Of a DNA stretch of 64,000 nucleotides, positions 1 to 62,997 are shown one piece after another (the first letter of the stretch is position 1; every line of letters begins with the position of its first letter). The stretch lies in NCBI GenBank assembly GCA_965285935.1, contig OZ260662.1:70990001-71054000 (forward strand), read 5' to 3'. A program made the translations under genes and the position numbers. The notes under the pieces were generated by a model. That model was given only the letters and a program-made list of their open reading frames with translations, was not told where the DNA came from and did not search any database. The DNA comes from Ophelia neglecta (lineage: Eukaryota).

Positions 1-39
1 TCCTTCGGGGAACACAGGGAATTCTCCGGGTTTAAATTG
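1..39 (-). CDS. A-module second exon, truncated by the window edge
   Basis: Acceptor at 40-41; [13 protein letters not shown]. Confidence 0.8.
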
Positions 40-3000
40 CTACAAAATATTAGTTCGGAATGAATTGTCATATATGCGATTATTTTCACTTTAATGCATG
101 CATTATCTCTAAAATATCACGGTACAGTATTTCCCAAATCGATCATCTATTAGATCTTACATCTGGTTCTTGGTCGCCATCCAGATCTAGAGGTACCCAA
201 GTGGTTGATCCCTCGGGCATAATGTATATTTCAAAGGTGTCAACATTTTCTGTCACAGGAATCAGCTTCCCAAGCTGTGGAGCCTCGGGATAACCATCAC
301 TAGTCAGATCAACTATAATTTCCTTGTTTGGTTCATCAACAGGAATGTTCAATGGGTCATTATCGCTTGGTCTCACAGAGCCGGTGCTCCCGGTAGGCAT
401 GTTAATGTTTTCGTCGGGGATTATTTGTGGATTGTCCATGCCATCTTCAACCGTGCAAGGTCCTTCTGGTAGGCGGATAATCAATTATTGTATTTATGTA
501 CTTTTACAGAATTGCAGAAAGGGTCCGTATTAGTTTGTCCTTTCTCAAGTTAGAAAACTGTTGTTATGTTGATTTTTGATGCAAATATGTTACATCTTGA
601 TAATTGATTACCTGTTGTTGTTTCTGGGGCGGTAGTAGTTCCTGGACTTGTGGTCGATACAGCAGTTGTAGTTCCTGAACAACAATTGTTGTTAGTAAAT
701 AAATAGATTTTTGTTTATGGATAGGTATGGGTGAATGAACTATCTTTAAACATGCATGTAAAAACCTGTATGTAGATAGTTTACTCTCATGCTTAAAATT
801 GGATTCAACGGCAATAGATACACTATCTGACTTTATTCTATGTAGGTGTGTGCTGCGGTGTTTATTCGAGGATGTCTATGAGTTCAAGTTATTTTCAAAT
901 GCGATGCTATGACTTTTATGGTCATGAATGATGAATCATGTTTGTTTCATTACATTCGACATTGTGTTTGATGCATTTCCGACTGCAAAACTGGTTAAAT
1001 ACTAGTATACAGTCAATGCGATAAACATTAACAATACCAAAAGCGAATATATTGCTTGAAACTACAAGGATGAGAACATGTTGGTGAACTGGTGACAGCC
1101 TTTCTTCGAAGAAAAAGGTTATGATCAATCTTCACATTGTCTTATAGACAGAAATACACTACCTGGATGATAACAGGCAGTTAGTTCGAAGGTGATCAAA
1201 ACAGGCAACGTTTCATCTAGAGGGTTGACGACAATTTTAATTTCTTCGGCAAAAGTTCCTTCGGGGAACTCAGGGGCCTCTCCAGGGCTAAATTGCTAAA
1301 AGAACATGTTTGCATATAGACTATTATATGCGATCCGGGTTTTAAATGTTGATACAGTCATTGTCTTTCAAATCAACGAAGCAGTATGTGTGAATGAAGT
1401 GCGTTTTTAAATCTTACATCTGGTTCCCCATCGCCATCAAGATCTAGAGGTATCCATGTTGTTGATCCCTCGGGCATAATGTATACTTCAAAAGTGTCGA
1501 CATTTTCTGTCACAGGAACCAGCTGTCCAAGGCTAGGAGCCCCGGGGTAGCCATCACTAGTCAGGTCAACTACAATTTCCTTGTTTGGTTCATCAGCAGG
1601 TATGGTCAATGGATCGTTATCACCTGGTCTCACAGAGCCGGTGCTTCCGCTTGGCACACTAATATTTTCGTCGGGAAGTATTTGTGGATTATCCATGCCA
1701 TCTTCAATCTGGCAAGGTCCTTCTGCCAGGTGGATATATTATATAAGATTTATGTTTCGGGGTGATTTCGAAGTAAGACATTCACTCATACATTCTACCT
1801 AAATAAATAAACTGTCATGATTCTTGTTTGAGAAAATATGAGATTTTCCAAGAGTAGGTTACCTGTTGTTGTACCCGGGGCAGATGTTGTTCCTGGACTA
1901 GTGGTCGATACTGCTGTTGTAGTTCCTAAGCAATTCAGAATGAATGTCAATCAAGAAACTTGTAATTATATAATGGATTATAAGTGTTAAATGTATCTAA
2001 TGTCAAAACACTTGCAGAGCTGATGATCAATCATTTTAAACTTGTTGGATCAGTAATTGTTCCAGAATGTATGATCTTTTGTGTATATACATTGGTCCCT
2101 TTGGACCATCTAAATTTGAAATATTGTCCATATGACGTTAATGTCATGCGCAACTTTGAAATAGCTGCATTAATATGAAGAGCTAAATCGCCAATTCACT
2201 GGTTGAAAAGAATGGGAATGAATTATATTCTTTTGAGTGAAATAGAAACACTTTTTTCGAGGCAAAAGGGATAGTTTAAAATACACATTGAAGTACACTA
2301 CCTGGATGATAACAAGCTGATAATTCGAAAGTGATCACTACAGGCGATGTTTCATCTACAGGGTCAAGAACAATTTTTACTTCTTCAGCGTATGTTCCTT
2401 CGGGGAATACAGGGGATTCTCCGGGTTTAAATTGCTACAAAATATTAGTTCGGAATGAATTGTCATATATGCGATTATTTTCACTTTAATGCATGCATTA
2501 TCTCTAAAATAACACGGTACAGTATTTCCCAAATCGATCATCTATTAAATCTTACATCTGGTTCTTGGTCGCCATCCAGATCTAGAGGTACCCAAGTGGT
2601 TGATCCCTCGGGCATTATGTATATTTCAAAGGTGTCAACATTTTCTGTCACAGGAATCAGCTTCCCAAGCTGTGGAGCCTCGGGATAACCATCACTAGTC
2701 AGATCAACTATAATTTCCTTGTTCGGTTCATCAACAGGAATGTTTAATGGGTCATTATCGCTTGGTCTCACAGAGCCGGTGCTCCCGGTAGGCATGTTAA
2801 TGTTTTCGTCGGGGATTATTTGTGGATTGTCCATGCCATCTTCAATCGTGCAAGGTCCTTCTGGTAGGCGGATAATCAATTATTGTATTTATGTACTTTT
2901 ACAGAATTGCAGAAAGGGTCCGTATTAGTTTGTCCTTTCTCAAGTTAGAAAACTGTTGTTATGTTGATTTTTGATGCAAATATGTTACATCTTGATAATT

Positions 3001-6000
3001 GATTACCTGTTGTTGTTTCTGGGGCGGTAGTAGTTCCTGGACTTGTGGTCGATACAGCAGTTGTAGTTCCTGAACAACAATTGTTGTTAGTAAATAAATA
3101 GATTTTTGTTTATGGATAGGTATGGGTGAATGAACTATCTTTAAACATGCATGTAAAAACCTGTATGTAGATAGTTTACTCTCATGCTTAAAATTGGATT
3201 CAACGGCAATAGATACACTATCTGACTTTATTCTATGTAGGTGTGTGCTGCAGTGTTTATTCGAGGATGTCTATGAGTTCAAGTTATTTTTAAATGCGAT
3301 GCTATGACTTTTATGGTCATGAATGATGAATCATGTTTGTTTCATTACATTCGACATTGTGTTTGATGCATTTCCGACTGCAAAACTGGTTAAATACTAG
3401 TATACAGTCAATGCGATAAACATTAACAATACCAAAAGCGAATATATTGCTTGAAACTACAAGGATGAGAACATGTTGGTGAACTGGTGACAGCCTTTCT
3501 TCGAAGAAAAAGGTTATGATAAATCTTCACATTGTCTTATAGACAGAAATACACTACCTGGATGATAACAGGCAGTTAGTTCGAAGGTGATCAAAACAGG
3601 CAACGTTTCATCTAGAGGGTTGACGACAATTTTAATTTCTTCGGCAAAAGTTCCTTCGGGGAACTCAGGGGCCTCTCCAGGGCTAAATTGCTAAAAGAAC
3701 ATGTTTGCATATAGACTATTATATGCGATCCGGGTTTTAAATGTTGACACAGTCATTGTCTTTCAAATCAACGAAGCAGTATGTGTGAATGAAGTGCGTT
3801 TTAAAATCTTACATCTGGTTCCCCATCGCCATCAAGATCTAGAGGTATCCATGTTGTTGATCCCTCGGGCATAATGTATACTTCAAAAGTGTCGACATTT
3901 TCTGTCACAGGAACCAGCTGTCCAAGGCTAGGAGCCCCGGGGTAGCCATCACTAGTCAGGTCAACTACAATTTCCTTGTTTGGTTCATCAGCAGGTATGT
4001 TCAATGGATCGTTATCACCTGGTCTCACAGAGCCGGTGCTTCCGCTTGGCACACTAATATTTTCGTCGGGAAGTATTTGGGGATTATCCATGCCATCTTC
4101 AATCTGGCAAGGTCCTTCTGCCAGGTGGATATATTATATAAGATTTATGTTTCGGGGTGATTTCGAAGTAAGACATTCACTCATACATTCTACCCTAATA
4201 AATAAACTGTCATGATTCTTGTTTGAGAAAATATGAGATTTTCCAAGAGTAGGTTACCTGTTGTTGTACCCGGGGCAGATGTTGTTCCTGGACTAGTGGT
4301 CGATACTGCTGTTGTAGTTCCTAAGCAATTCAGAATGAATGTCAATCAAGAAACTTGTAATTATATAATGGATTATAAGTGTTAAATGTATCTAATGTCA
4401 AAACACTTGCAGAGCTGATGATCAATCATTTTAAACTTGTTGGATCAGTAATTGTTCCAGAATGTATGATCTTTTGTGTATATACATTGATCCCTTTGGA
4501 CCATCTAAATTTGAAATATTGTACATATGACGATTATGTCATGCGCAACTTTGAAATAGCTGCATTAATATGAAGAGCTAAATCGCCAGTTCACTGTTTG
4601 AAAAGAATGGGAATGAATTATATTCTTTTGAGTGAAATAGAAACACTTTTTTCGAGGCAAAAGGGATCGTTTAAAATACACATTGAAGTACACTACCTGG
4701 ATGATAACAAGCTGATAATTCGAAAGTGATCACTACAGGCGATGTTTCATCTACAGGGTCAAGAACAATTTTTACTTCTTCAGCGTATGTTCCTTCGGGG
4801 AATACAGGGGATTCTCCGGGTTTAAATTGCTACAAAATATTAGTTCGGAATGAATTGTCATATATGCGATTATTTTCACTTTAATGCATGCATTATCTCT
4901 AAAATAACACGGTACAGTATTTCCCAAATCGATCATCTATTAAATCTTACATCTGGTTCTTGGTCGCCATCCAGATCTAGAGGTACCCAAGTGGTTGATC
5001 CCTCGGGCATTATGTATATTTCAAAGGTGTCAACATTTTCTGTCACAGGAATCAGCTTCCCAAGCTGTGGAGCCTCGGGATAACCATCACTAGTCAGATC
5101 AACTATAATTTCCTTGTTTGGTTCATCAACAGGAATGTTTAATGGGTCATTATCGCTTGGTCTCACAGAGCCGGTGCTCCCGGTAGGCATGTTAATGTTT
5201 TCGTCGGGGATTATTTGTGGATTGTCCATGCCATCTTCAATCGTGCAAGGTCCTTCTGGTAGGCGGATAATCAATTATTGTATTTATGTACTTTTACAGA
5301 ATTGCAGAAAGGGTCCGTATTAGTTTGTCCTTTCTCAAGTTAGAAAACTGTTGTTATGTTGATTTTTGATGCAAATATGTTACATCTTGATAATTGATTA
5401 CCTGTTGTTGTTTCTGGGGCGGTAGTAGTTCCTGGACTTGTGGTCGATACAGCAGTTGTAGTTCCTGAACAACAATTGTTGTTAGTAAATAAATAGATTT
5501 TTGTTTATGGATAGGTATGGGTGAATGAACTATCTTTAAACATGCATGTAAAAACCTGTATGTAGATAGTTTACTCACATGCTTAAAATTGGATTCAACG
5601 GCAATAGATACACTATCTGACTTTATTCTATGTAGGTGTGTGCTGCAGTGTTTATTCGAGGATGTCTATGAGTTCAAGTTATTTTTAAATGCGATGCTAT
5701 GACTTTTATGGTCATGAATGATGAATCATGTTTGTTTCATTACATTCGACATTGTGTTTGATGCATTTCCGACTGCAAAACTGGTTAAATACTAGTATAC
5801 AGTCAATGCGATAAACATTAACAATACCAAAAGCGAATATATTGCTTGAAACTACAAGGATGAGAACATGTTGGTGAACTGGTGACAGCCTTTCTTCGAA
5901 GAAAAAGGTTATGATAAATCTTCACATTGTCTTATAGACAGAAATACACTACCTGGATGATAACAGGCAGTTAGTTCGAAGGTGATCAAAACAGGCAACG

Positions 6001-54000: not shown

Positions 54001-57000
54001 GTGGTTCCGCCTATAGAATAATACAAGATCAACCTTTAAGATGAATTTTCTTATAACTTTTAACATGAAAATCATATACATTTTGCAACAATAATGTTTT
54101 TAATGATATATCTTTCTAGCAAAGTAATGTTATCACTATAAATTGCCGTATAAAAACAAACGTAGTTTATGAAGGGGAAACTTACCGCAACATATGACTA
54201 CATATGCCCCAGATATCATGATCGTATCATCGCCATTTCGAACAGCGACAACCTCGAAGTCGTTTCCTTCGTACCCTTGTCCGACATCTTGTTGTCCGTT
54301 AATAAACTCGCCATCACGTACGGCGGTCTGGTTTGAAAGGGGCAAAAAATTTCTGATAACATGGAATAGGCTATATGTAGGTCTGAGCACGTCCCATTTA
54401 ATTTCCAAGTACAGTGAAACCTGTGTTTGTGGTCACCTGTGTAATAAGGCCACCTGCCCACTAATGTCACTAAAAATAGCCCAATCGTCAGTTATGCTGT
54501 CTTAAATGACCTGCCTATTAAGGTCACCTGCATAATGTGGTCAGCTTTTTCCAGTTCCTTGACTGACCTGATTAGACAGGTTTCACTGTATTGGTTATTG
54601 CTTGGATTCATATTTATACAAATGCGTGCCTTTTGATTGATTTATTATCATTGCCCCTTAACCATTACATGCTTAACACGTGGACACTACTTATCGTTTA
54701 CACTTTTAATGTATTGTTTTCTATGACGCTGCCCCGCTGACTGTTTACCTACCGCATTTGACATTGCGTTTCCAATCCTGATGAGAACGCTGCCAGCGCC
54801 GGTTGGATAAAATCCAAATTCGACTATCTCTGGTTCCGCACATGGTTCTGCCAGCTTCATGACGAAACTAACTTGCTCAATGCCGCTTGGGGCAACCCAT
54901 CCATCCGTATTGGGTGAACCGAGAAGTCCGTCACTGGCATCTTCGGTCACACTTCCATCGGAATCGGAGCCCACAGCTTCGAAATTCACAGTACCAAGAT
55001 CCAAAGTGTCGAAGTTCAGGACTCGGCTGTTCGCACAAGGTGGAACGATGGAAGTCGCCACTGTTGAAACTGTGGCTAAACGAAATAAAAACATTGTGTT
55101 TTAAACAGTGGACGTTTATTCAGTTGAATGACCATGGTATTTTCATTGTACATGTACGTGTAGTTCGACATTCGGAGCCTTTCTTTATTTGAAATGTATG
55201 GTTGCACAGTTAAAAAAAGTTGTATATAATGTCACTTGAATATGTTGTCATCCGCACCCCCACGCATATACCAACGTGTAATAATTCATAGGACTGTATT
55301 ATATATTTAAACACTTACTGAGTCCATGCTCACAAACTTCGATAACCACATCCTTCAATTGTGGAATGTTCCCATCAGTCGGCGTCAATAATAGTACCAA
55401 AACGTAAGGGATCATGTTGTCTTCATAGTTAAAGTTTATTTCTCCGGACGGCCAAAATTCATCTTTGCTCACTAACGTAGTTGGGGTAATCTGAAGTCAC
55501 AGCGAAAAATAATTGTAAAGTGGGAGAAGCATGGTTCATGCATATCTAAAGGATTTTTTTATGTTGTTCTCGACCAATTAATCTTTGATTTAGCGCCTAC
55601 ATTAATACAGGATGTGGGGTACAAAATGAGGAAATATAGTCTTTGTTGCAAGAAAAATGAAGTCATGTTAGAGCAAAAGTTGTTATAATGTTCATGGCTT
55701 TAATTTACTTTCAGTATTTCAGAATTGGTTAATAATATTACGATTAATAACATCAACATTAATATTTGGCAGATACAATTTTCTGGATACTTTAGTATTG
55801 TGATTGTGTACGTTGTGATTAAAAAGTACTCCCCGGAAATAACCATGGACATTTCAAGTTCAAACAGAAGTATTTGTTATTTATATTAATGAATATTATC
55901 AGCCCTTAATATTCCTTATGCATACAATAATGGCGCCGGATGGGCAAAACGAGCCATGCCACAAATCAACCTAACTGCTCGTTTTTGATAATTGAGAAAT
56001 GGTTCCAAATATGATTTACAGGCACTTCCCACACAATAATCCAGATAAGGATATAAAAATGAATAATAAGGTGACTTTAATGCTCCCTTGGTGATAATTA
56101 TCCGAACAGACTTGTCTAAGTATTGTAAAAACGAAATTACGAGCATGTCACCTAACGTATAGAACCCTTTCAGTAAAAGGCTTTATTTTACATGAAAATC
56201 CTTGTAAAACACAGCTTAATTGGGCGGTATTTATCACGTGCGTGCCATAACCAACGAATCAAACTTGACACTCCAAGTTATCCACTGTAACAGGTGAACA
56301 TTATGTGCCATGCTGTACCAACGTGGCTGCTCTGGCTAAATTACAGCCTGATACTCCCAAAGTATCCCAGCATGCAGCCCCGTCTTCCGTTTCTCGCCAG
56401 ATGGCATTAACATAAAAAAATATTCTCCTGCATATGCCCTATTCGGAAGCCGCCTTCGATCATAGCCAAAGGAAATTCAATGTTCAATTCAATTTATATA
56501 CCATATTCGCCTTATGAATATAGAAACATTATTAATTAAATGTATATGTACCTATTATAAAGTCACGAATAATATTACAACATCATTAGCTTCAAAACTG
56601 CAGAGCAGAAAACCAAAATGTCATATATTTCATCACAGCAACAAAGGAAACATGCATTAATGTTCGATAAAATAACGACGGTCTGTATATTTTACAAATG
56701 TGCTAAAGCGAGTGTGAGGGTGGGAGGGTTAAATGTGATGTGAAATGTGTATATATAATGAGGTGCTAGGTTTCTATTGTGATACTGTGATTCGATGATT
56801 AAGTTGTAGATAAATGGAGTTATAATTAAATAATTATAACTAGAAATATTGTGGAGAAGAAAGATCTTTGTTGGTTTTCTAAATAAGTGCGTTGGGTAGT
56901 TTTAATTTAAATAATTATGGCATAGATATGTATAATCCATTCTCTATATCTATGATTATGGGTACCGAAGATTCGAAGGCTTTTTTCATTACCTTTCAAA

Positions 57001-60000
57001 TTTTGGCTTATGAACGATATCATACTATATGATAAAGGAAACTTTTAGGTTGTATCTTACCTCATTGTCTATGACTGCTTTCTCCTCAAAGCCAATAAAT
57101 TCAAACTCCAGTTTTGCACTTTCAACATTGGCCGCTTCAAATGACAGGGACACAATTTTAGAAATGCTGTCGGTGACTTCAAAACGTATCCACACTTGTT
57201 CATCATTTGCGTCTTCACTGGTAGGAGACCAGACGTCTTCTGACCCAGTCAGTAAATTAACTGCATCTGGTGAGTTGGACGAAGCCGTAACTTCCATTTC
57301 GTTTGCGGATGTTGAAAATAGTACGTCGTGACATATTCCAGTGGTTGTTGTTTCAGCGGTTGTAGGGGTAGCGGTAAGGGTGGAGGTAAGCGGTGTCGAT
57401 GGTGTACTGGTACTCATAGTAGTAGGTCCAACTACAACACAAAACATGTAAAATGCATATACATTTTATTGAGTAGCCTCGCGATGAAACGCCGGCCTTA
57501 TTCATGTTATAACAAAATGATTTATACACAATGCTTCATCGCGGTAACAGGATACAAATGGCTCTCATGAAAATGCAGTTCGAACTGGTTCTATCTGTCT
57601 GTGAGAATCTGTCTCCAGAATGAAAATAGTTTAAGCTAGATTGTGGCATGGTTGCCCAGTATGCTCGCGCCAAATCTCATACCTCTATGTATGCATGCAT
57701 CCAATACAAGATCACGGACGAGTACGTTTTGTTCTCCATCAACGATTTCAGTAATTTCTATTTGAACGCTAGCGACATCTTGGATACCATCGCCAGGCAT
57801 CTCGGTATCTACCAGCATCCAGCTGGTTGGCTCCTCGAAGGAGAGCTGTAATTGTTCATTTTCATGGTTAAATTAATTCATTTAAAATAGTAATGGGCGA
57901 GATATGTGGGAAGGTAAGAAAGCGTTTTGGGGTCAAACGCGTAAATTGATACGCAAATTTATACTTGTATGCACATAATTTGTAGGTTCCACACTCTCAA
58001 CGCTTTAAATATTACCCTCAAATAAAAATGAATCGCACACCAAAGCAAGAAAATACGAGAATAGATATATGTATATGATAATCTAGTTATATCTAGTCAT
58101 ATATTTATATATAACGCATACACAGATCTAAGCAGGCAGGAGTAGAATGGCAGTGGGTTGCGACTAGAAGGTAATCAGAAACTCACTTGTTTGGAAGCCA
58201 GCTGTTGGCCATTTTCACCGAAGATAGTTATATCAATTGTGTCTGCATTTTGGATAAAAAACTGGAGGTCAACCAGTGTAAAAGGATTGAGGTCGTCATC
58301 TTTCCTGATGACTATAGTGGGAGCTCCGTCGACAGGAATGTCCAGCGTCAGAGTGCTGCCAGAGTTGGCTAGAGCATCTTCTGGGCCGTCCTGACCAGGA
58401 CCGATAGGATTGGCACTGATTGTGAAACCGCCCGATCCATATTCGTAGTTGATTCTGTCCTCGTTCGCATAACAGATCTTCGCTGTTTTGGAGAAGAAAA
58501 AAGTATTTTAAGTTAGGTTTTAATCTACCCGTAGAATATGACGTTCTGATGGCACGGCCCATTACATGAATCTCATAAAGAATGTTGTAACAAGGACGAC
58601 AGCCATTGTTAATTTGAGTAAAACCTGCATTACAGTAAATGCTAACAATTAGGTCGGCTATTAGACGGATCATGCGGCGTCTGGCTGATGGGAAAGGAGG
58701 CTGCCAGCGGCTGGAATCTCCTCTCTCACCAGCCATTGGGCGCTGGTGTATGGGTGGCGCTGCAGGGGTGTGAGAGAGGGATAATATCGGCTTTTGGAAC
58801 GGATGTCGGTTAGGGAAAAAAGGAAGAGCACTTCAATGCCCAGGCCTCTGCGGGGTGGGGCATAGACTTCCAAGGTGGGGGCACTTTCGGAGTCAGGACA
58901 AACAGACTTCTTCGGGATGTGGGTGGGGCGGTGTTACCATTGTAAGAATAGCAATTATCAAAAACATGGTATTGTGGTATTATACATGTTAAGTGTCAAT
59001 TAATAAAATAAATAGCACATGGTTTGTTCAATATCACGGATTGTCATCTACCTGGTGTCTGAAGGCGGATGGTATTATCACCTGAGACGCAGGCCAGGGC
59101 AATAAAATATATTCAAGGAGCCATTTACAAGTAATTTGAAGTTATGTGATATTAAACAAACCATTATTTGTATAATATCTACCTTCAGAGGTGGTTGGCA
59201 GTGTCGACAGTGTTGTATACGCTAATGTCGGCCCAGTGCCTGCAGTAAATATACAGTACATAGAATTTAATACTTGATAAATGCTAATGGAAATTTGTTG
59301 CCAAGTATAATAGTTTTAATGTGAAGTATACGGTGGTAAATAATCTAAGTAAACATTAAAAAACTTGCTTGAGGAGATGATTTCCGTTACGGTTGTTGTA
59401 TACGCTAATGTCGGCCCAGTGCCTGCAGTAAATATACAGTACATAGAATTTAATACTTGATAAATGCTAATGGAAATTTGTTGCCAAGTATAACAGTTTT
59501 AATGTTAAGTATACGGTGGTAAATAATCTAAGTAAACAGTAAAAAACTTGCTTGAGGAGATGATTTCCGTTACGGTAGAAGTGGATGTCGGTATTGTTGT
59601 TGTTCCTCTTGTGGTAGTTGCTTTATGGTTAGAATGAAAACAATTAGAATTGTGCTGTTTAATTTGGCATTTAATTGACTTGCCATAAGATATCTGTTAC
59701 TATATTCATATCCATATTTATCCAATATCCACTTTAACATAATAGATATAAATTTATATATAACAGTATATAGTGGTATAGCCTGTATATAGAAATCCTG
59801 TAGACAATTGTCCACTTACGCAGATATATGCATGCTTTCAGGGCCACACCCCTAAGGCCTATGTTTATTGAGGATGATGTTTGCTCGAAGGAGATTTGAA
59901 GATCTCCACTCACAACCCCCTCCCGTCCAAGGTCGATACTCATAAAGTTGAAGTCATTTGGGTTCTCTGGTATCATATCAAATGTCTGAAAATATATAAT

Positions 60001-62997
60001 TAGTTTTGTTTAAAACACAGAGAAAAGACTGTCCAAGCAGAATACGGTTTTTTCCACGCCACCTTCATACGTGTTTAACTATTGATTGCTTCAAATAACT
60101 GGAAAATTATTAAGACACACCTTTGAGCGAGTGAACAATCAGTTTCGATATCTATGTAGGATATTTTACCTCGAGTATAGATTTGTATATTAAAGTGATT
60201 TAGATCTACAATGTTAATCCAAATGTCAATTTTACTGGGGATATATTGGTGTATGAGATGTCTGGGATTCAAAGCCACGTTATGAAAAGACAGACACCCA
60301 CATACAAACATGAATATTTATTATAGTAAAAAAAAGTCAAGATATTTCGGCACCTACCCCATTAGGCAGTGGCGTCACACCATTTGGCTCAAGGAATGTG
60401 AGGATGACTTTGTCCGCTCCTCGCACCCACAGATGAACGTAGAATACAGAGGTCTCTTCTGAATCCAGATGAAGGGTGACAGTTTCGTCTGCATCAAACC
60501 AACCACTCTCACCAGACTCTTGCATGATATCGAGGCCAACGTCTGTTGGCTCAATGCTAAGATATTCCGAATTCACGTCCACGAGCTCTTCTTCGCATAT
60601 CTCTGTCGAGAGACGTATTATTGTTTTTTATTTTTCCAATTAAATCTAGTATAGGAAGGTGGGACAGCCGTCCCCCTCCCTCTATTCATGCTGGTAAATT
60701 GTCCTATATTAGTTCTATTTATTTCAATGATTGTTTTAAAACTCTGTAGTATTTATTAAAACAATTTCTTCCATGCCCTAATTTTCCCAAAACATATATT
60801 TAAAACATATCTCATTGTTATCATTCATCATATTTTTATGAATTAAAATTTGTGATCAAAGAAAGAGGATATGACGTGGACTTACTGCATCCATATTCAT
60901 CGGACCCATCCCCACAATCGTCATGGCCGTCACATTGGACTTCTGGGGGCATGCAGCCGCCATTGTTACAACGGAAGTAGTCGGTAGCCTCACATTCTGC
61001 AAAAAAAGGCATGCACTCATTACCATCAAATGAAGTGAATCAGTATAGATAAAACGTTACATTTAAAAGTCCATAATAAATAAAGAACCAAACAAATTTA
61101 TCTATGACCCGAATGCAAGGAACGCTAGAAATATTAGATAAAGGCATTGCACACATGTCTGCCTAGGTTTCAACACCTTACCAAGCACAAATTTAATTAA
61201 ACAATCTAATTAAATTGCCATTTTGGTGTATACACATTCTACCATATTGTTACTTTTGTTACAATCGATGGAAATATATTTGATAAGAAGAATTTACATT
61301 AAATGAGAAAATATATAAATGAATGTGATGACGATTAAGCTGGCCCACTCTGTATGACCATGCTCCAATGCCGCCCCCAGTACTGGCAATGGCCAATCTT
61401 AATACATTATATGTCAGTTTATATCATCGTGGTCAATGATACCAGATAATATTAATTTTGTGCGGCTAACTATCCAAATTCCGGTGGCGATATTCACTGA
61501 TCTACTATAAAAATCGGCATGCTAATACACCTATAATCACCCAAATTACTATGATTTGATCTCAAAAGTCGACTTTGACCCAGTGACTTCCAACTTACCA
61601 GTGCAATTGACTTCATCTGATGTATCATCTAAGCCACAATCATAGCTACCGTCGCAGCGGAAATCTCTATGGATACAATTTCCAGTATCACAGGTGAAGA
61701 AAGCTCGGTCACAGATTGGTGCTCCTGCATAATCAGATAGATCATATGAAGCCTATTGGTTCATTACAACATTCAACAAATCTCTTGAGAGTTAAAAGTG
61801 TATACAAAAGAAGAATTCTCTACAACACGTGTAAAATAAGTTTATTCAAGCTGCATATTTCTATCATTTTCGAACCACGTCTTACCACATCCGAACTCAT
61901 CACTGCCGTCGGCACAGTCGGGAGTTCCATCGCACTGGAAGTTCATGGATACACATTGTCCTCCGGACTGACACGAGAATTCGCCAGCTTGACAGATAAA
62001 TGCTGAAAAAAGTACCCAACTCTTGTTTACGTTTAGAAGGTGGATGTCTTATGGTGATTTATGGGCAACGATTTTAAATAAAGGGGTAAATTACTATGCT
62101 GAAACTTGTTAAAACATTGCGTATTGATTTTGATGTTGAAACGTACTGCAATTAAACTCATCAGATCCGTCTTGACAATCAGCGAGATGATCACACTTGA
62201 AGTTGGGAGGTAGACAGCGATCCTCGGCCTCGCAGCAGAAATCGTCCTCATCGCAGTCAGCACACTTCTGGCACCGCTCCCCGATACAATCAAATCGGCC
62301 AGCTTCGCAGGTGCTGCAATACACAACAATACATATTAACTTGAAGGGGCCTATGAACTTATATTGGATTCCGACTAGACCAGCCCTAAAGGCCTACATG
62401 TATATGCTTTTTCAAGTTTGACAGCTTCAAATACAAACGTGAATATAAATACAAACGTATTATCATATTGGTTTGCAATTTGAATATATATTTTTTTTAT
62501 TCTCCCTATGAAGGTGAGAATTCATGGGCATGTCAGCTTACCAATTTTGGCATTCTATGACAGCTTCTGTGCCTGGCGGGTAGTATTCACCGGCATGTTC
62601 ACAGCTGCAGTTCAGCGAGGGTATACACATATCGTCTGTTTCAAGTAAAAAAAGACATTTAGTAAGTAAAATACGAACAGCATAGGCCGGACCGCAACTA
62701 GCTATACATTAATCTTGTAAATAACAAGATGTTAAAACTGTTAACGTTTTATTTCCTCTGATATTTTTGAAATGACTCCACCCCTTTATATTTGGTCAGC
62801 TTACTAACTATGATATTGATCACAGAAAATGATGAAGAGTTGTTTACCTTGCGATACTGTGCCTTCAGGACAGAAGCAGCCTTCCAGACAATGGGCTTCC
62901 TGACAGTACGGCTCAGGGTCATCACCGATATTCTGGCAGGTTTGCTCGCATGGCGGTCCACATGCCCTGTACTCCTTGCCACCCTCACACATCATGG
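1..62997 (-). CDS. Partial giant multi-exon gene: secreted SCO-spondin/hemolectin/mucin-like protein (TIL-TILa/VWC-4xLDLa, then ~39 discoidin-like domains with Thr-rich linkers); open at both ends
   Basis: Consecutive exons have AG acceptors, GT (two probable GC) donors and matching phases, and give one continuous frame from 62997 to 1. TIL and LDLa cysteine patterns are recognisable. Confidence 0.88.
161..465 (-). CDS. Representative A-module first exon
   Basis: accag|..|gtaag, 305 nt, phase 1-0; [26 protein letters not shown]...[13 protein letters not shown]. Confidence 0.9.
612..674 (-). CDS. Representative A linker exon
   Basis: ttcag|..|gtaat, 63 nt, phase 1-1; [21 protein letters not shown]. 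Confidence 0.85.
1163..1295 (-). CDS. Representative B-module second exon
   Basis: tttag|..|gtagtg, 133 nt, phase 0-1; [44 protein letters not shown]. Confidence 0.88.
1418..1722 (-). CDS. Representative B-module first exon
   Basis: ggcag|..|gtaag, 305 nt, phase 1-0; [26 protein letters not shown]...[13 protein letters not shown]. Confidence 0.9.
1863..1925 (-). CDS. Representative B linker exon
   Basis: cttag|..|gtaac, 63 nt, phase 1-1; [21 protein letters not shown]. Confidence 0.85.
2302..2434 (-). CDS. Representative A-module second exon (repeats every 2395 bp)
   Basis: tgtag|..|gtagtg, 133 nt, phase 0-1; [44 protein letters not shown]. Confidence 0.88.
26195..33900 (-). repeat. 1704-bp sub-array: 5 B-type domain modules with truncated A-type pseudo-exons; 3407-bp higher-order period
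   Basis: 305-nt exons start at 26563, 28267, 29971, 31674, 33378. 133-nt exons start at 26308, 28011, 29716, 31418, 33123. Linker exons start at 27008, 27459, 28712, 29164, 30416, 30867, 32119, 32571, 33824. Confidence 0.9.
33900..48193 (-). repeat. C-type sub-array: 8 domain modules, spacing ~1515 bp + n x ~441 bp
   Basis: 305-nt exons start at 34888, 36403, 38801, 40756, 42712, 44226, 46185, 47701. 133-nt exons start at 34634, 36149, 38547, 40502, 42458, 43972, 45931, 47447. There are 21 63-nt linker exons between 34368 and 48193 and 13 intronic relics of a lost A-type exon. Confidence 0.9.
48418..48474 (-). CDS. Thr-rich linker exon
   Basis: cttag|..|gtaag, 57 nt, phase 1-1; [19 protein letters not shown]. 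Confidence 0.7.
48860..49357 (-). pseudogene. Decayed copy of the repeat domain (pseudo-exons 49104-49357 and 48860-48981)
   Basis: The first exon relic has in-frame deletions and TCA>TAA after ILPEG. The second exon relic is frameshifted but retains ...FTACSHP. Confidence 0.8.
49483..49542 (-). CDS. Thr-rich linker exon at the 5' edge of the array
   Basis: cttag|..|gtaag, 60 nt, phase 1-1; [20 protein letters not shown]. Confidence 0.72.
50977..51081 (-). CDS. Linker exon with VLDLTR motif
   Basis: tacag|..|gttgt, 105 nt, phase 1-1; [35 protein letters not shown]. Confidence 0.62.
51915..52007 (-). CDS. Linker exon with VLDLTR motif
   Basis: aacag|..|gttgt, 93 nt, phase 1-1; [31 protein letters not shown]. 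Confidence 0.6.
52137..52163. repeat. Short (TA)n microsatellite
   Basis: tatatacatgtatatatatatatatat. Confidence 0.7.
53918..54010 (-). CDS. Thr/Ser/Pro linker exon
   Basis: tatag|..|gtatt, 93 nt, phase 1-1; [31 protein letters not shown]. Confidence 0.78.
54186..54327 (-). CDS. Exon, domain U4, second half
   Basis: accag|..|gtaag, 142 nt, phase 0-1; [12 protein letters not shown]...[10 protein letters not shown]. Confidence 0.8.
54412..54588. mobile_element. 177-bp MITE, Tc1/mariner superfamily (pogo/Tigger-like ends)
   Basis: Perfect 13-bp TIR CAGTGAAACCTGT / ACAGGTTTCACTG, flanked by TA at 54410-54411 and 54589-54590; internal (C/G)ACCTG repeats. Confidence 0.85.
54753..55075 (-). CDS. 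Exon, short linker + discoidin-like domain U4, first half
   Basis: tttag|..|gtaggt, 323 nt, phase 1-0; [11 protein letters not shown]...[18 protein letters not shown]... Confidence 0.8.
55319..55490 (-). CDS. Exon, domain U3, second half
   Basis: ttcag|..|gtaag, 172 nt, phase 0-1; [14 protein letters not shown]...[13 protein letters not shown]. Confidence 0.8.
55770..56090 (-). mobile_element. Degenerate non-LTR retrotransposon (CR1/L2-like) 3' ORF2 fragment in intron
   Basis: Translation [43 protein letters not shown], then stop-interrupted [17 protein letters not shown]; recognised from memory as the post-RT region of CR1/L2-clade LINEs; boundaries approximate. Confidence 0.72.
57061..57431 (-). 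CDS. Exon, PTS linker + discoidin/F5-8C-like domain U3, first half
   Basis: tgtag|..|gtaag, 371 nt, phase 1-0; Thr-rich run, then C...EVTASS...VWSP...EQVWIRFEV, which resembles F5/8C motifs. Confidence 0.85.
57683..57845 (-). CDS. Exon, domain U2, second half
   Basis: tacag|..|gtatg, 163 nt, phase 0-1; LSFEEPTSW...[12 protein letters not shown]. Confidence 0.82.
58187..58482 (-). CDS. Exon, divergent discoidin-like domain U2, first half
   Basis: aacag|..|gtgag, 296 nt, phase 1-0; [26 protein letters not shown]...[22 protein letters not shown]. Confidence 0.82.
59183..59239 (-). CDS. Thr-rich linker exon
   Basis: tgcag|..|gtaga, 57 nt, phase 1-1; [19 protein letters not shown]. Confidence 0.7.
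59211..59576. repeat. Two-copy 183-bp tandem duplication
   Basis: 59211-59393 and 59394-59576 are near-identical. Confidence 0.92.
59369..59422 (-). CDS. Chimeric Thr-rich linker exon created by a 183-bp duplication (probable GC donor)
   Basis: tgcag|..|gcaagt, 54 nt, phase 1-1; [18 protein letters not shown]. Confidence 0.55.
59552..59620 (-). CDS. Thr-rich linker exon (probable GC donor)
   Basis: taaag|..|gcaagt, 69 nt, phase 1-1; [22 protein letters not shown]. Confidence 0.62.
59820..59985 (-). CDS. Exon, domain U1, second half
   Basis: ttcag|..|gtaag, 166 nt, phase 0-1; TFDMIPENP...[13 protein letters not shown]. Confidence 0.82.
60358..60602 (-). CDS. Exon, divergent discoidin-like domain U1, first half
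   Basis: gacag|..|gtaggt, 245 nt, phase 1-0; [14 protein letters not shown]...[13 protein letters not shown]...TPLPNG. Confidence 0.8.
60886..60996 (-). CDS. Exon, LDLa repeat 4
   Basis: tgcag|..|gtaag, 111 nt, phase 1-1; [37 protein letters not shown]. Confidence 0.93.
61599..61724 (-). CDS. Exon, LDLa repeat 3
   Basis: tgcag|..|gtaag, 126 nt, phase 1-1; [41 protein letters not shown]. Confidence 0.93.
61886..62002 (-). CDS. Exon, LDLa repeat 2
   Basis: ttcag|..|gtaag, 117 nt, phase 1-1; [38 protein letters not shown]. Confidence 0.93.
62147..62313 (-). CDS. Exon, end of TILa/VWC-like module + LDLa repeat 1
   Basis: tgcag|..|gtacg, 167 nt, phase 2-1; [15 protein letters not shown]...[23 protein letters not shown]. 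Confidence 0.92.
62542..62635 (-). CDS. Exon, end of TIL and start of TILa/VWC-like module
   Basis: aacag|..|gtaagc, 94 nt, phase 1-2; [32 protein letters not shown]. Confidence 0.9.
62848..62997 (-). CDS. Exon, TIL (trypsin inhibitor-like Cys-rich) domain
   Basis: cgcag|..|gtaaac, 150 nt, phase 1-1; [49 protein letters not shown]. Confidence 0.93.

What the first reader, a model, noticed from the sequence alone, without database searches (positions are those of the whole stretch)
1..62997. Giant beads-on-a-string secreted protein: a TIL/LDLa head fused to at least 35 near-identical acidic domains with mucin-type linkers
Seen: all exons can be spliced into one frame of roughly 7,200 aa (about 1,040 aa unique, about 6,200 aa array), still open at both ends. 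Known: TIL + TILa/VWC followed by LDLa repeats and an F5/8 type C domain is the arrangement of SCO-spondin, and related VWD-C8-TIL proteins (hemolectin, gel-forming mucins) polymerise into fibres or gels. Inference: here the discoidin-like position has expanded to ~39 copies alternating with O-glycosylatable Thr linkers. I do not recognise this architecture. It could be a lineage-specific mucus, adhesive, tube or mineralised-matrix polymer.
Basis: partly seen in the sequence, partly recalled or inferred. Interest (0 to 1): 0.85.

Follow-up and report, generated by a model that had tools for sequence, protein, structure and literature searches.

The report
Giant discoidin-beaded SCO-spondin-like mucin gene
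The window holds the middle third of one huge invertebrate gene for a secreted, polymer-forming mucus-type protein, in which short sugar-carrying threonine linkers alternate with dozens of near-identical acidic beads of the discoidin (lectin-like) fold; it is an unusual variant of a known protein class, and no RNA evidence is available.

Summary
On the minus strand the window carries a TIL exon, four LDLa exons and four unassigned two-exon modules. After these come 35 intact copies of a three-exon cassette: 305 + 133 + 63 nt, which is 167 codons. In total there are 35 first exons, 34 second exons, 52 linker exons and 4 truncated relics, about 6,160 aa.

A phase-consistent GT-AG chain links head and array. 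The cassettes are under purifying selection (pN/pS 0.19-0.35).

The gene runs far beyond the window. Upstream lie EGF, a weak TB hit and three sets of VWD exons with C8 and TIL. Downstream lie 33 more beads (68 in all), a second array of 15 different beads with 240-aa PTS exons, then TSP1, TIL and a cystine knot. The locus spans roughly 173 kb and perhaps 20,000 aa.

The bead has no Pfam match. A 33%-identical relative folds as a discoidin/galactose-binding-like sandwich, with top Foldseek hits to neuropilin b1b2 and factor V/VIII C domains. The bead also shares a phase-0 intron position with this genome's canonical F5/8-C exons.

Lophotrochozoan SCO-spondin-like mucins with F5/8-C domains are already published, so this is a new variant, not a new kind. 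This scan had already described the same gene's tail and two similar loci 17 Mb away. Transcript continuity and function remain untested.

The parts
62849..62989 (-). TIL domain exon (inside the open segment 62807-63193; the acceptor is uncertain)
   Evidence: Pfam PF01826, E 2.5e-9, residues 69-115 of the segment
62542..62635 (-). Cys-rich exon that continues the TIL module (TILa-like); no Pfam hit
   Evidence: Open segment with 7 Cys; chosen by the splice chain; Pfam gave nothing
62148..62258 (-). LDLa repeat 1, preceded in the same exon by an extra Cys-rich stretch
   Evidence: Pfam PF00057, E 3.7e-6
61886..62002 (-). LDLa repeat 2, a phase 1-1 exon
   Evidence: Pfam PF00057, E 1e-12; splice chain
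61599..61724 (-). LDLa repeat 3, a phase 1-1 exon
   Evidence: Pfam PF00057, E 4.4e-10; splice chain
60886..60996 (-). LDLa repeat 4, a phase 1-1 exon
   Evidence: Pfam PF00057, E 1.8e-10; splice chain
59850..60602 (-). Unassigned module U1. Two exons, about 60358-60602 and about 59850-59985. The second probably extends a few codons further, to a GTAAGT donor after the terminal Cys.
   Evidence: Open segments; phases 1-0-1 as in the array module; no Pfam hit
59145..59696 (-). Thr-rich linker exon candidates, including a 183-bp tandem duplication (59211-59576). Exact exons are uncertain.
   Evidence: TRF, 2 copies at 98%; open segments; weak splice scores
57683..58482 (-). Unassigned module U2. 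Two exons: 58187-58482 and 57683-57833.
   Evidence: no Pfam hit
55319..57431 (-). Module U3 with a 30-aa Pro/Thr/Ser leader. Exons 57061-57431 and 55319-55490. The intron between them holds a retrotransposon-like ORF.
   Evidence: no meaningful Pfam hit
54186..55069 (-). Module U4. Exons 54753-55069 and 54186-54327. It is related to the beads of the second array downstream.
   Evidence: 33% identity, E 2.8e-6, to the array-B exon; alignment A3; splice chain
53918..54010 (-). Thr/Ser/Pro linker exon
50977..52007 (-). Two short Thr/Ser-rich candidate exons (51915-52007 and 50977-51117). Donors are weak, so inclusion is uncertain.
   Evidence: donor scores -1.9 and -3.4
49152..49361 (-). Degenerate bead exon with an internal deletion and a stop codon: a dead first copy
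   Evidence: 66% identity with 1 TAA; open segments
48131..49542 (-). Three Thr-rich linker exons leading into the array: 49483-49542, about 48418-48510, and 48131-48193
33824..48005 (-). Array, proximal part. Eight 'GPCK' cassettes with periods of about 1.5-2.4 kb. Each has exon a, exon b and 2-4 linker exons. The extra linkers sit on 441-bp sub-repeats that also carry decayed exon-a relics.
25800..33682 (-). Array, middle part. Five 'GPCQ' cassettes with a 1704-bp period. Four of them are followed by a truncated T-type exon-a relic, starting at 32424, 30721, 29017 and 27313.
1..25659 (-). Array, distal part. Alternating Q-type and T-type cassettes in 2395-bp double units that are 97-100% identical, introns included. 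It continues past the window start.
   Evidence: continuation shown
3007..4117 (-). Representative Q-type cassette: exon a 3813-4117 (305 nt), exon b 3558-3690 (133 nt), linker exon c 3007-3069 (63 nt)
   Evidence: Sequence read directly; regex model
1863..2860 (-). Representative T-type cassette: exon a 2556-2860, exon b 2302-2434, linker exon c 1863-1925

Best explanation
The window is the middle of one very large minus-strand gene of a lophotrochozoan invertebrate (mollusc or annelid, not resolved). The gene spans about 173 kb, at G000:C2 from about 70.8917 to 71.0647 Mb. It encodes a secreted, disulfide-polymerising glycoprotein of the VWD-C8-TIL / cystine-knot class, that is, a gel-forming mucin on a SCO-spondin-like frame.

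Shown here:
- The domain order is EGF / TB-like, three sets of VWD exons with C8 and TIL, then TIL, four LDLa and four unique bead modules.
- These are followed by 68 near-identical acidic beads, each followed by one or more 21-aa Thr-rich linker exons.
- Then come 15 beads of a second type, each with a PTS exon (about 240 aa in most units, shorter in the three diverged ones).
- The tail is TSP1, TIL and a cystine knot.
- The arrays grew by tandem copying of whole exon-intron cassettes whose exons are all phase-compatible.
- The bead coding sequence is under purifying selection.

Inferred:
- The N-terminal VWD assemblies and the C-terminal knot join chains end to end, as in mucins, VWF and SCO-spondin.
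- The linkers are O-glycosylated and stiff.
- Each bead is a roughly 145-aa discoidin-type beta-sandwich, closed by its first and last cysteine and carrying a DxDxDG-type calcium loop.
- The beads act as spacers and as weak glycan- or calcium-dependent cross-linkers, giving a cohesive mucus or adhesive secretion.
For: Anatomy:
- A phase-consistent GT-AG chain runs from TIL to the array, and the U modules share the bead's 1-0-1 intron phases.

Extent:
- All 69 genomic matches to exon a lie in one block, C2:70950721-71039358.
- The second array has 15 copies, plus the window's U4 as a 33%-identical relative.

Ends of the gene:
- Upstream: three separate VWD hits plus C8, TIL, EGF and a weak TB.
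- Downstream: TSP_1 twice, TIL and Cys_knot in two exons.

Selection:
- pN/pS is 0.22, 0.19 and 0.35 between bead subtypes, with pS up to 0.44.
- Between subtypes, exons are 80-85% identical and introns 51-63%.
- There is no stop or frameshift in 35 + 34 exons.

Real array rather than a collapsed assembly:
- Units show an identity gradient from 1.000 between neighbours to 0.972 between distant units, and there are distinct unit variants.

Fold:
- An AF2 model of relative P0021 has domain-1 pLDDT of about 77.
- Its top Foldseek hits are neuropilin b1b2 and factor V/VIII C domains, E from 6e-6.
- VIA Z scores of 9-11 cover the galactose-binding-like superfamily.
- Window exons a and b both align to that relative, E 9e-8 and 2e-4.
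- A family profile against PDB sequences gives CBM32 (E 0.027) and factor V C2 (E 0.25) as the top hits, in register.

Intron position:
- Canonical F5/8-C exons of this genome break at profile position 83/84 with a phase-0 donor, just before the F-x-G-N motif. The bead breaks in phase 0 just before Q-F-x-P-G-E, and its last exon is 44 aa against 42-44.

Literature:
- Lophotrochozoan mucin-like proteins carry F5_F8 domains and group with SCO-spondins (PMC4948705).
- A SCO-spondin-like VWD-C8-TIL-LDLa protein is made in the limpet pedal sole and found in its adhesive mucus (PMC7333891).
- Discoidin-repeat proteins Nectin and Sfp1 act in echinoderm adhesives (PMC7037938).
Against:
- No signal-peptide exon was identified (one search gave only weak candidates).
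- The bead does not reach Pfam F5_F8_type_C.
- hhalign against this genome's canonical exons is not significant: E 0.12 for exon a and 0.44 for exon b.
- The window's own exon a, folded alone, gave no usable fold.
- The fold evidence rests on a relative with about 33% identity.
- The linkers are only 21 aa long, far shorter than classical PTS domains.
- Four exon-a relics keep their acceptor site and would introduce stops if used.
Confidence: 0.72

Rival explanations
1. This is the organism's true SCO-spondin orthologue. It would be secreted by neural or glial cells into a Reissner-fibre-like thread rather than into epithelial mucus, and the bead arrays would be a lineage-specific lengthening of the middle.
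For: The head and tail follow the SCO-spondin order: VWD, C8 and TIL exons, then LDLa, and at the far end TSP1, TIL and CTCK. Lang 2016 places some invertebrate mucin-like proteins next to SCO-spondins (PMC4948705). SCO-spondin expression is discussed for protostome radial glia in PMC5543218, but I saw only the title and abstract of that paper.
Against: Only two TSP1 exons were found, against the long TSP1/SCOR series that defines SCO-spondin as described in PMC7333891. PTS exons of 240 aa and about 87 beads point to a mucin. The limpet protein with the same head is expressed in the foot sole (PMC7333891). Two further giant bead mucins are noted 17 Mb away (earlier notes, not tested here), so this is a gene family rather than a single conserved orthologue.
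Confidence: 0.1
2. The head and the array are not one expressed protein. The array, or much of it, would be skipped, pseudo-exonic, or a separate transcription unit.
For: No RNA evidence is available. There is one dead first copy with a stop and four truncated relics with intact acceptors. Splice sites between 50 and 52 kb are weak.
Against: All 69 intact exons in the window are open and of constant length. pN/pS is well below 1 and exons are conserved far better than introns. Every cassette is phase-symmetric and in frame with the head and with the downstream cystine knot. The array has no start-like or terminal exon of its own. A chiton protein model contains seven such beads with PTS spacers.
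Confidence: 0.1
3. The copy number is partly an assembly artefact. Near-identical 2.4-kb units may have been over- or under-expanded, so the true protein could be considerably shorter or longer.
For: Neighbouring double units are 99.6-100% identical, introns included. That is the range in which assemblers can miscount.
Against: Identity falls gradually with distance, from 1.000 to 0.972. Unit subtypes (T, Q, K; periods 2395, 2382, 1704, 1956 and 1514 bp) occur in an ordered layout. There are no gaps (N) in the window or in the flanks read. This rival changes the number of beads, not the nature of the gene.
Confidence: 0.12
4. The protein is an acidic calcium-binding matrix component (shell, tube or other mineralised or hardened secretion) rather than a hydrated mucus.
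For: The beads have pI about 4 and about 20% Asp+Glu, and each carries a DLDGDGEPD loop. Pfam gives weak, sub-threshold FG-GAP calcium-loop hits, E 0.007-0.06.
Against: The polymerising VWD/CTCK ends and the PTS exons are the hallmark of gel-forming mucins. The nearest described analogues are mucus or adhesive proteins (PMC7333891, PMC7037938). There are no Gly/Ala/Asp low-complexity runs typical of shell-matrix proteins in the exons read.
Confidence: 0.06

Closest known systems
Lophotrochozoan gel-forming mucin-like proteins with F5_F8_type_C domains (Lang et al. 2016, PMC4948705)
   Same: They have N-terminal VWD-C8-TIL units, discoidin-type domains in the middle, and a sequence affinity to SCO-spondins. 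They come from the same broad animal group.
   Different: That paper describes recognisable F5_F8 domains and inserted CysD domains. Here there are about 87 beads that Pfam does not recognise, arranged as strict bead-linker cassettes, plus LDLa repeats and TSP1 exons.
Vertebrate SCO-spondin
   Same: The order is the same: VWD-C8-TIL units, a TIL, a cluster of LDLa repeats, then TSP1/TIL and a C-terminal cystine knot. It is also a giant secreted, fibre-forming glycoprotein.
   Different: SCO-spondin's bulk is a long TSP1/SCOR series without PTS domains. Here the bulk is two bead/PTS arrays, and only two TSP1 exons were found. Orthology was not tested.
Limpet pedal-mucus proteins P-vulgata_3 and P-vulgata_6 (Kang et al. 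2020, PMC7333891)
   Same: P-vulgata_3 has VWD x3, C8 x2, TIL x2 and LDLa x5, the same composition as this gene's head. P-vulgata_6 has TSP1 x4 plus a cystine knot, matching this gene's tail. Both were found in adhesive mucus, and P-vulgata_3 is expressed in the foot sole.
   Different: They are reported as two separate transcriptome contigs with no bead array. Whether they are the two ends of one gene like this one is my conjecture and was not tested.
Liolophura sinensis 'mucin-2-like' XP_064614628.1 (P0005)
   Same: It is the only named protein carrying the same bead, with 46% identity to exon a. Seven beads alternate with Pro/Thr/Ser spacers.
   Different: It is an 1,824-aa automatic model with no VWD, LDLa or cystine knot in the model. 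Its beads are about 160 aa and its spacers are longer and irregular.
Echinoderm adhesive proteins Nectin (six discoidin domains) and Sfp1 (discoidin + VWD + C8 + EGF) (PMC7037938)
   Same: They are secreted proteins with tandem discoidin domains used for cohesion in temporary adhesives. Their discoidin domains bind galactose and GlcNAc.
   Different: They have canonical discoidin domains in 4-6 copies, no mucin linkers, and come from a different phylum. The resemblance is functional only.
CysD-interrupted PTS regions of vertebrate MUC2/MUC5
   Same: Small disulfide-closed globular domains are interspersed in O-glycosylated stretches of a VWD/CTCK polymer. This comparison rests on my own knowledge, with CysD mentioned in PMC4948705.
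   Different: The fold is different and copy numbers are far lower. The PTS stretches dominate, whereas here the beads dominate.

Membership tests
Gel-forming mucin / VWD-CTCK polymerising glycoprotein | Several N-terminal VWD-C8-TIL units | tested here: met
   Three separate VWD hits plus C8 and TIL hits in the 10 kb upstream of the window (L005), same strand and order
Gel-forming mucin / VWD-CTCK polymerising glycoprotein | Central Pro/Thr/Ser-rich (PTS) regions | tested here: met
   52 linker exons of 20-21 aa, about 60% Thr+Ser, in the window; PTS exons of about 240 aa in the downstream array
Gel-forming mucin / VWD-CTCK polymerising glycoprotein | C-terminal cystine knot | tested here: met
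   Pfam Cys_knot in two consecutive exons at L011:1724-2405, E 6.4e-7 and 7.8e-5
Gel-forming mucin / VWD-CTCK polymerising glycoprotein | Signal peptide; a single transcript; heavy O-glycosylation | not testable with these tools
   No RNA runs were available. Only weak start-exon candidates were found. Glycosylation needs experiment.
SCO-spondin | Cluster of LDLa repeats after the VWD/TIL head | tested here: met
   Four Ldl_recept_a exons directly after a TIL exon
SCO-spondin | Long series of TSP1 / SCOR repeats forming most of the protein | tested here: not met
   Only two TSP_1 exons were detected near the 3' end. The bulk of the protein is bead and PTS arrays.
SCO-spondin | N-terminal EMI domain | tested here: inconclusive
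   An exon with a CCxGW motif lies upstream (L006:505-678), but Pfam gave no EMI hit. The adjacent EGF exon is confirmed.
SCO-spondin | Orthology by phylogeny of the VWD/LDLa region | not tested
   No tree was built. The organism's own annotated proteins are absent from the protein collection.
F5/8 type C (discoidin) domain, PF00754 | Match to the Pfam profile above its gathering score | tested here: not met
   No hit for any window exon or for relatives P0005, P0015, P0021 and P0022. None of the 126 genomic PF00754 matches lies in this gene.
F5/8 type C (discoidin) domain, PF00754 | Discoidin / galactose-binding-like beta-sandwich fold | tested here: met
   Met for relative P0021 only. Foldseek top hits are neuropilin b1b2 and FV/FVIII C domains, E 6e-6 to 1e-3. 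VIA gives Z 9-11 over 115-130 residues. The window's exon a alone was uninformative. The joined bead was not folded.
F5/8 type C (discoidin) domain, PF00754 | Cysteine near each end of the domain (the N-C disulfide of FA58C, from my own knowledge) | tested here: met
   There are exactly two Cys per bead: residue 3 of exon a and the fourth residue from the end of exon b, in all copies. The disulfide itself is inferred.
F5/8 type C (discoidin) domain, PF00754 | Statistically supported sequence homology to canonical members | tested here: inconclusive
   hhalign against this genome's canonical exons gives E 0.12 and 0.44, though in the correct register. The family profile against PDB gives CBM32 E 0.027 and factor V C2 E 0.25. 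The phase-0 intron position before the F-x-G motif is shared.
Hemolectin / hemocytin | 3 + 2 VWD layout, with discoidin domains between the two VWD blocks | tested here: inconclusive
   No VWD-like open segment was seen in the 10 kb holding the tail. The stretch between the arrays and the tail was only read as open frames, not scanned exhaustively.

The most novel reading that the evidence does not exclude
The protein is a self-complementary gel. Its roughly 87 lectin-fold, calcium-loop-bearing beads would bind the O-glycans of the neighbouring linkers or PTS stretches of other chains. One gene product would then supply both the ligand and the receptor of a reversible, calcium-tunable network. 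If so, cassette copy number would be a directly evolvable dial for mucus stiffness or adhesion.
Probability: 0.12. Interest if true: 0.75.

Novelty: new variant of a known kind. Interest (0 to 1): 0.5.

Why it matters
If it is expressed as one chain, this would be among the largest secreted proteins known, at roughly 20,000 residues. It would also be a clear example of a mucin whose bulk is folded lectin-type beads rather than disordered glycosylated sequence.

It shows how whole exon-intron cassettes with symmetric phases can be amplified to tune the length of an extracellular polymer.

It suggests that short-read transcriptome studies of mollusc and annelid mucus or adhesives, such as the limpet SCO-spondin-like fragments, may have seen only the unique ends of such genes.

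The bead family is invisible to Pfam and has only about 20 detectable relatives among 1.84 billion representative proteins. Describing it would improve annotation of lophotrochozoan secretomes.

Tried and rejected
Everything was done exon by exon, by reference.
- Window exon a folded alone, with a 21-row alignment, gave pLDDT 73 but almost no strands and no Foldseek match.
- hhalign of the exon-a family and the exon-b copies against canonical F5/8-C exons of the same genome was not significant.
- hhalign of array-A beads against array-B beads was not significant, E 0.037, probability 1.4%. The two bead types cannot be called homologous by sequence.
- ESM Atlas feature search with exon a gave no usable hit. 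The fold search 'atlas' library was unavailable.
- The search for homologous proteins with one bead of the chiton protein found only the chiton protein itself in the 1,000-3,200 aa range.
- Organism identification through the neighbouring ZIP transporter failed, with a best hit of 65% and no name. Contigs of the nearest bead relatives carry only run or assembly accessions.
- The bacterial Calx-beta and FG-GAP hits in the representative search (P0006, P0011, P0014, P0020) match only the acidic DxDxDG-type stretch. I set them aside as motif-level similarity.
- The search for a start exon with a signal peptide gave only weak candidates.

Full report
**What is in the window**

The sequence is eukaryotic, 38% G+C, with no N. 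A k-mer distance spectrum shows a dominant 2,395-bp period plus 1,704, 1,956 and 1,514-bp variants. All long meaningful open segments lie on the minus strand.

Reading one unit directly gives a three-exon cassette with canonical GT-AG borders:
- Exon a is 305 nt. It starts with two bases that complete a Glu codon, then G-P-C, and ends at E-P-D.
- Exon b is 133 nt, from Q-F-x-P-G-E to A-C-Y-H-P plus one base.
- Exon c is 63 nt and encodes a 20-21-aa linker with about 60% Thr and Ser.

The three sum to 501 nt, or 167 codons, so every cassette is frame-neutral.

A pattern scan of the whole window finds 35 exon a, all 305 nt and open, giving 13 protein variants. It finds 34 exon b, all 133 nt and open, with the 35th cut by the window start. 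It also finds 52 linker exons and 4 truncated exon-a relics, at 27313, 29017, 30721 and 32424. Together these are 18,470 nt, about 6,157 aa. The '~39' figure includes the four relics, and a further dead copy with a stop sits at 49,152-49,361.

**The head**

Pfam confirms a TIL exon (E 2.5e-9) and four LDLa exons (E 3.7e-6 to 1e-12) between 63.0 and 60.9 kb. Between 60.6 and 54.1 kb lie four two-exon modules (U1-U4) with no Pfam match, separated by Thr-rich exons.

I ran a dynamic-programming search over all AG/GT pairs inside the candidate open segments. It finds a chain from the TIL exon to the first array exon in which every junction keeps the frame. The LDLa exons are phase 1-1. Each U module has the same 1-0-1 phase pattern as the array bead.

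Some borders are uncertain: the TIL and LDLa1 acceptors, the U1 second-exon donor, the linkers at 59.1-59.7 kb, and two weak exons at 51-52 kb. The head is roughly 1,050-1,250 aa.

**Beyond the window**

The window is G000:C2:70,990,001-71,054,000. A six-frame search of the whole 762-Mb genome with exon a returns 69 matches, all in one block at C2:70,950,721-71,039,358 on the minus strand. Of these, 68 are intact and one is degenerate. The array is therefore twice what the window shows, and the bead occurs nowhere else in the genome at this sensitivity.

Directly downstream lies a second array with a period of about 3.1 kb. Each unit has a PTS exon of about 240 aa and a different two-exon bead. 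There are 12 near-identical and 3 diverged copies, and the window's U4 is a 33%-identical relative.

The 3' end then carries two TSP_1 exons, a TIL exon and a cystine knot split over two exons. About 4.6 kb further on there is an unrelated ZIP-transporter ORF.

Upstream of the window, Pfam finds three VWD hits with C8 and TIL, an EGF exon and a weak TB hit.

The whole locus is about 173 kb. My rough sum of exons is on the order of 20,000 residues with about 87 beads. That total is an estimate, not a measured transcript.

**Is it real coding sequence?**

Between the three bead subtypes (T, Q, K), synonymous divergence reaches 0.42-0.44 while non-synonymous divergence is 0.08-0.09. This gives pN/pS of 0.22, 0.19 and 0.35.

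Between T and Q half-units, exons are 80-85% identical and the introns 51-63%. No copy has a stop or a length change. This pattern indicates selection on the protein rather than neutral repeat DNA.

The 2,395-bp double units are 97.2-100% identical, introns included, and neighbours are more alike than distant units. This fits recent tandem amplification or gene conversion of whole cassettes and argues against a simple assembly collapse. The exact copy number still deserves long-read confirmation.

**What the bead is**

The bead is about 145 aa with pI about 4.05. It has about 29 acidic against 3-5 basic residues, and exactly two cysteines, one near each end. It ends exon a with D-L-D-G-D-G-E-P-D, a DxDxDG-type motif. 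That motif explains weak, sub-threshold FG-GAP hits and the motif-level bacterial hits in the library search.

Pfam has no model for the bead. An exhaustive HMMER scan of 1.84 billion representative proteins returns only 22 hits. About 16 are true relatives, mostly single exons from unannotated animal contigs. Their read-through tails start with the same Val-Arg codons (GTx AGx), which suggests the donor site is conserved. The only named relative is the chiton Liolophura sinensis 'mucin-2-like' XP_064614628.1, with seven beads between PTS spacers.

Relative P0021 is 394 aa with two beads, and the window's exons a and b align to it at E 9e-8 and 2e-4. It was folded with a 21-row alignment, and its first bead has pLDDT of about 77. 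Foldseek's best matches are neuropilin b1b2 and coagulation factor V/VIII C domains, E from 6e-6. The independent VIA search gives Z 9-11 over 115-130 residues to DOC, IFT25, CBM32 and discoidin domains, that is, the galactose-binding-like superfamily.

A profile of the family against PDB sequences puts a CBM32 (E 0.027) and the factor V C2 domain (E 0.25) on top, in the same register.

The genome has at least 126 canonical F5/8-C exon matches, and none lies in this gene. These canonical domains are typically split at profile position 83/84. In the four examples for which I had flanking sequence, the donor after the conserved Trp/Phe is phase 0. The following exon starts at x-F-x-G-N and is 42-44 aa. 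The bead is split in phase 0 just before Q-F-x-P-G-E, and its last exon is 44 aa ending in F-E-L-x-A-C, compared with W-E-L in the canonical exons.

Profile-profile comparison with those canonical exons is not significant, although it is in register. I conclude that the bead has a discoidin-type fold and is probably a very divergent F5/8-C derivative. Membership of PF00754 by sequence is not met.

The window's exon a alone did not give a searchable model. The fold evidence is therefore indirect, and the U1-U4 and array-B modules were not folded at all.

**How it most likely works**

- Shown: the domain order, the cassette structure and the selective constraint.
- Inferred from established knowledge of VWD-C8-TIL / CTCK proteins (mucins, VWF, SCO-spondin): C-terminal knots dimerise and N-terminal VWD assemblies multimerise, producing long disulfide-linked polymers.
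- Inferred: the Thr-rich exons are O-glycosylated and act as stiff spacers. The beads are compact, disulfide-closed, strongly acidic sandwiches that may bind calcium through the DxDxDG loop and glycans through the discoidin loops, adding reversible cross-links.

The nearest described analogues point to a cohesive mucus or temporary adhesive. The limpet foot-sole protein P-vulgata_3 (VWD x3, C8, TIL, LDLa x5) and P-vulgata_6 (TSP1 x4 + CTCK) are both found in pedal mucus (PMC7333891). Echinoderm Nectin and Sfp1 have tandem sugar-binding discoidin domains (PMC7037938). I conjecture that the two limpet contigs could be the unique ends of a gene like this one. That was not tested.

**Comparison with the known, and novelty**

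Lang et al. 2016 (PMC4948705) already state that Lophotrochozoa have several mucin-like proteins, that the F5_F8 domain is characteristic of them, and that invertebrate mucin-like sequences are most similar to SCO-spondins. The class is therefore known.

What I could not find described is the scale and regularity: about 87 beads, 68 of them near-identical in 167-codon cassettes. I also found no description of beads diverged beyond Pfam recognition, nor of this combination with LDLa and TSP1 modules.

This scan had already described the last third of this same gene (s1-745699) and two similar giant genes 17 Mb away (s1-747423, s1-730842). My exon-a search did not pick those loci up, so their beads are at best distant relatives.

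I rate the finding as a new variant of a known kind, of moderate interest, limited by the complete lack of expression data.

**Limits**

- The organism was not identified. It is a lophotrochozoan by its nearest relatives, but mollusc versus annelid is open.
- No signal-peptide exon was found.
- Splice sites are predicted, not observed.
- Copy number rests on the assembly.

Noticed in passing
window 37144-38459, 39540-40414, 41498-42370, 44967-45843: 441-442-bp tandem sub-repeats (94-97% identical) lie inside the proximal cassettes. Each carries one 63-nt linker exon plus a decayed exon-a relic (P-Q-G-H-Y in place of P-E-G-P-C, acceptor lost). Linker number therefore varies from 2 to 4 per bead through a second, nested level of cassette copying.
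   Followed up: partly
window 27313, 29017, 30721, 32424 (minus strand): Four truncated T-type exon-a relics keep a perfect acceptor but run into a stop after 18-29 codons. A deletion fused exon a to the intron that follows exon b. If they are recognised by the spliceosome they would poison the transcript, so they must be skipped or tolerated.
   Followed up: partly
window 59211-59576: A 183-bp tandem duplication (2 copies, 98%) duplicates a candidate Thr-rich mini-exon between modules U1 and U2.
   Followed up: no
window 55919-56182 (minus strand): An 88-aa open segment in the intron of module U3 looks, from memory, like the C-terminal part of a non-LTR retrotransposon reverse transcriptase. 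It is probably a transposon fragment.
   Followed up: no
L012:6064-7101 (G000:C2:70886064-70887101, minus strand): A single-exon ZIP zinc-transporter ORF (PF02535 in its relatives) lies about 4.6 kb past the cystine-knot exon and marks the 3' limit of the giant gene. Its best database relative is only 65% identical, so this species' proteins are not in the collection.
   Followed up: partly
G000: C1:132.7-133.6 Mb, C2:103.8-104.9 Mb, C5:16.6-19.1 Mb, C12:62.0-62.2 Mb, C16:0.26-0.90 Mb: Large clusters of canonical F5/8 type C exons occur here, with at least 126 matches genome-wide. This suggests expanded families of discoidin-domain genes, most of them split by a phase-0 intron at profile position 83/84.
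   Followed up: partly
L016 (Logan ERR14113986 contig), L017 (ENA ERZ27286548 contig): Unannotated contigs from other samples encode single bead exons 59-63% identical to the window's exon a, with the same exon end. The bead family therefore exists in other, unidentified animals.
   Followed up: partly
L006:226-678 and L005:9521-9868 (upstream of the window): The 5' part of the gene has a CCxGW-motif exon, an EGF exon and a weak TB-like exon ahead of the first VWD domain. This head is unusual for a mucin. An EMI domain was not confirmed by Pfam.
   Followed up: partly
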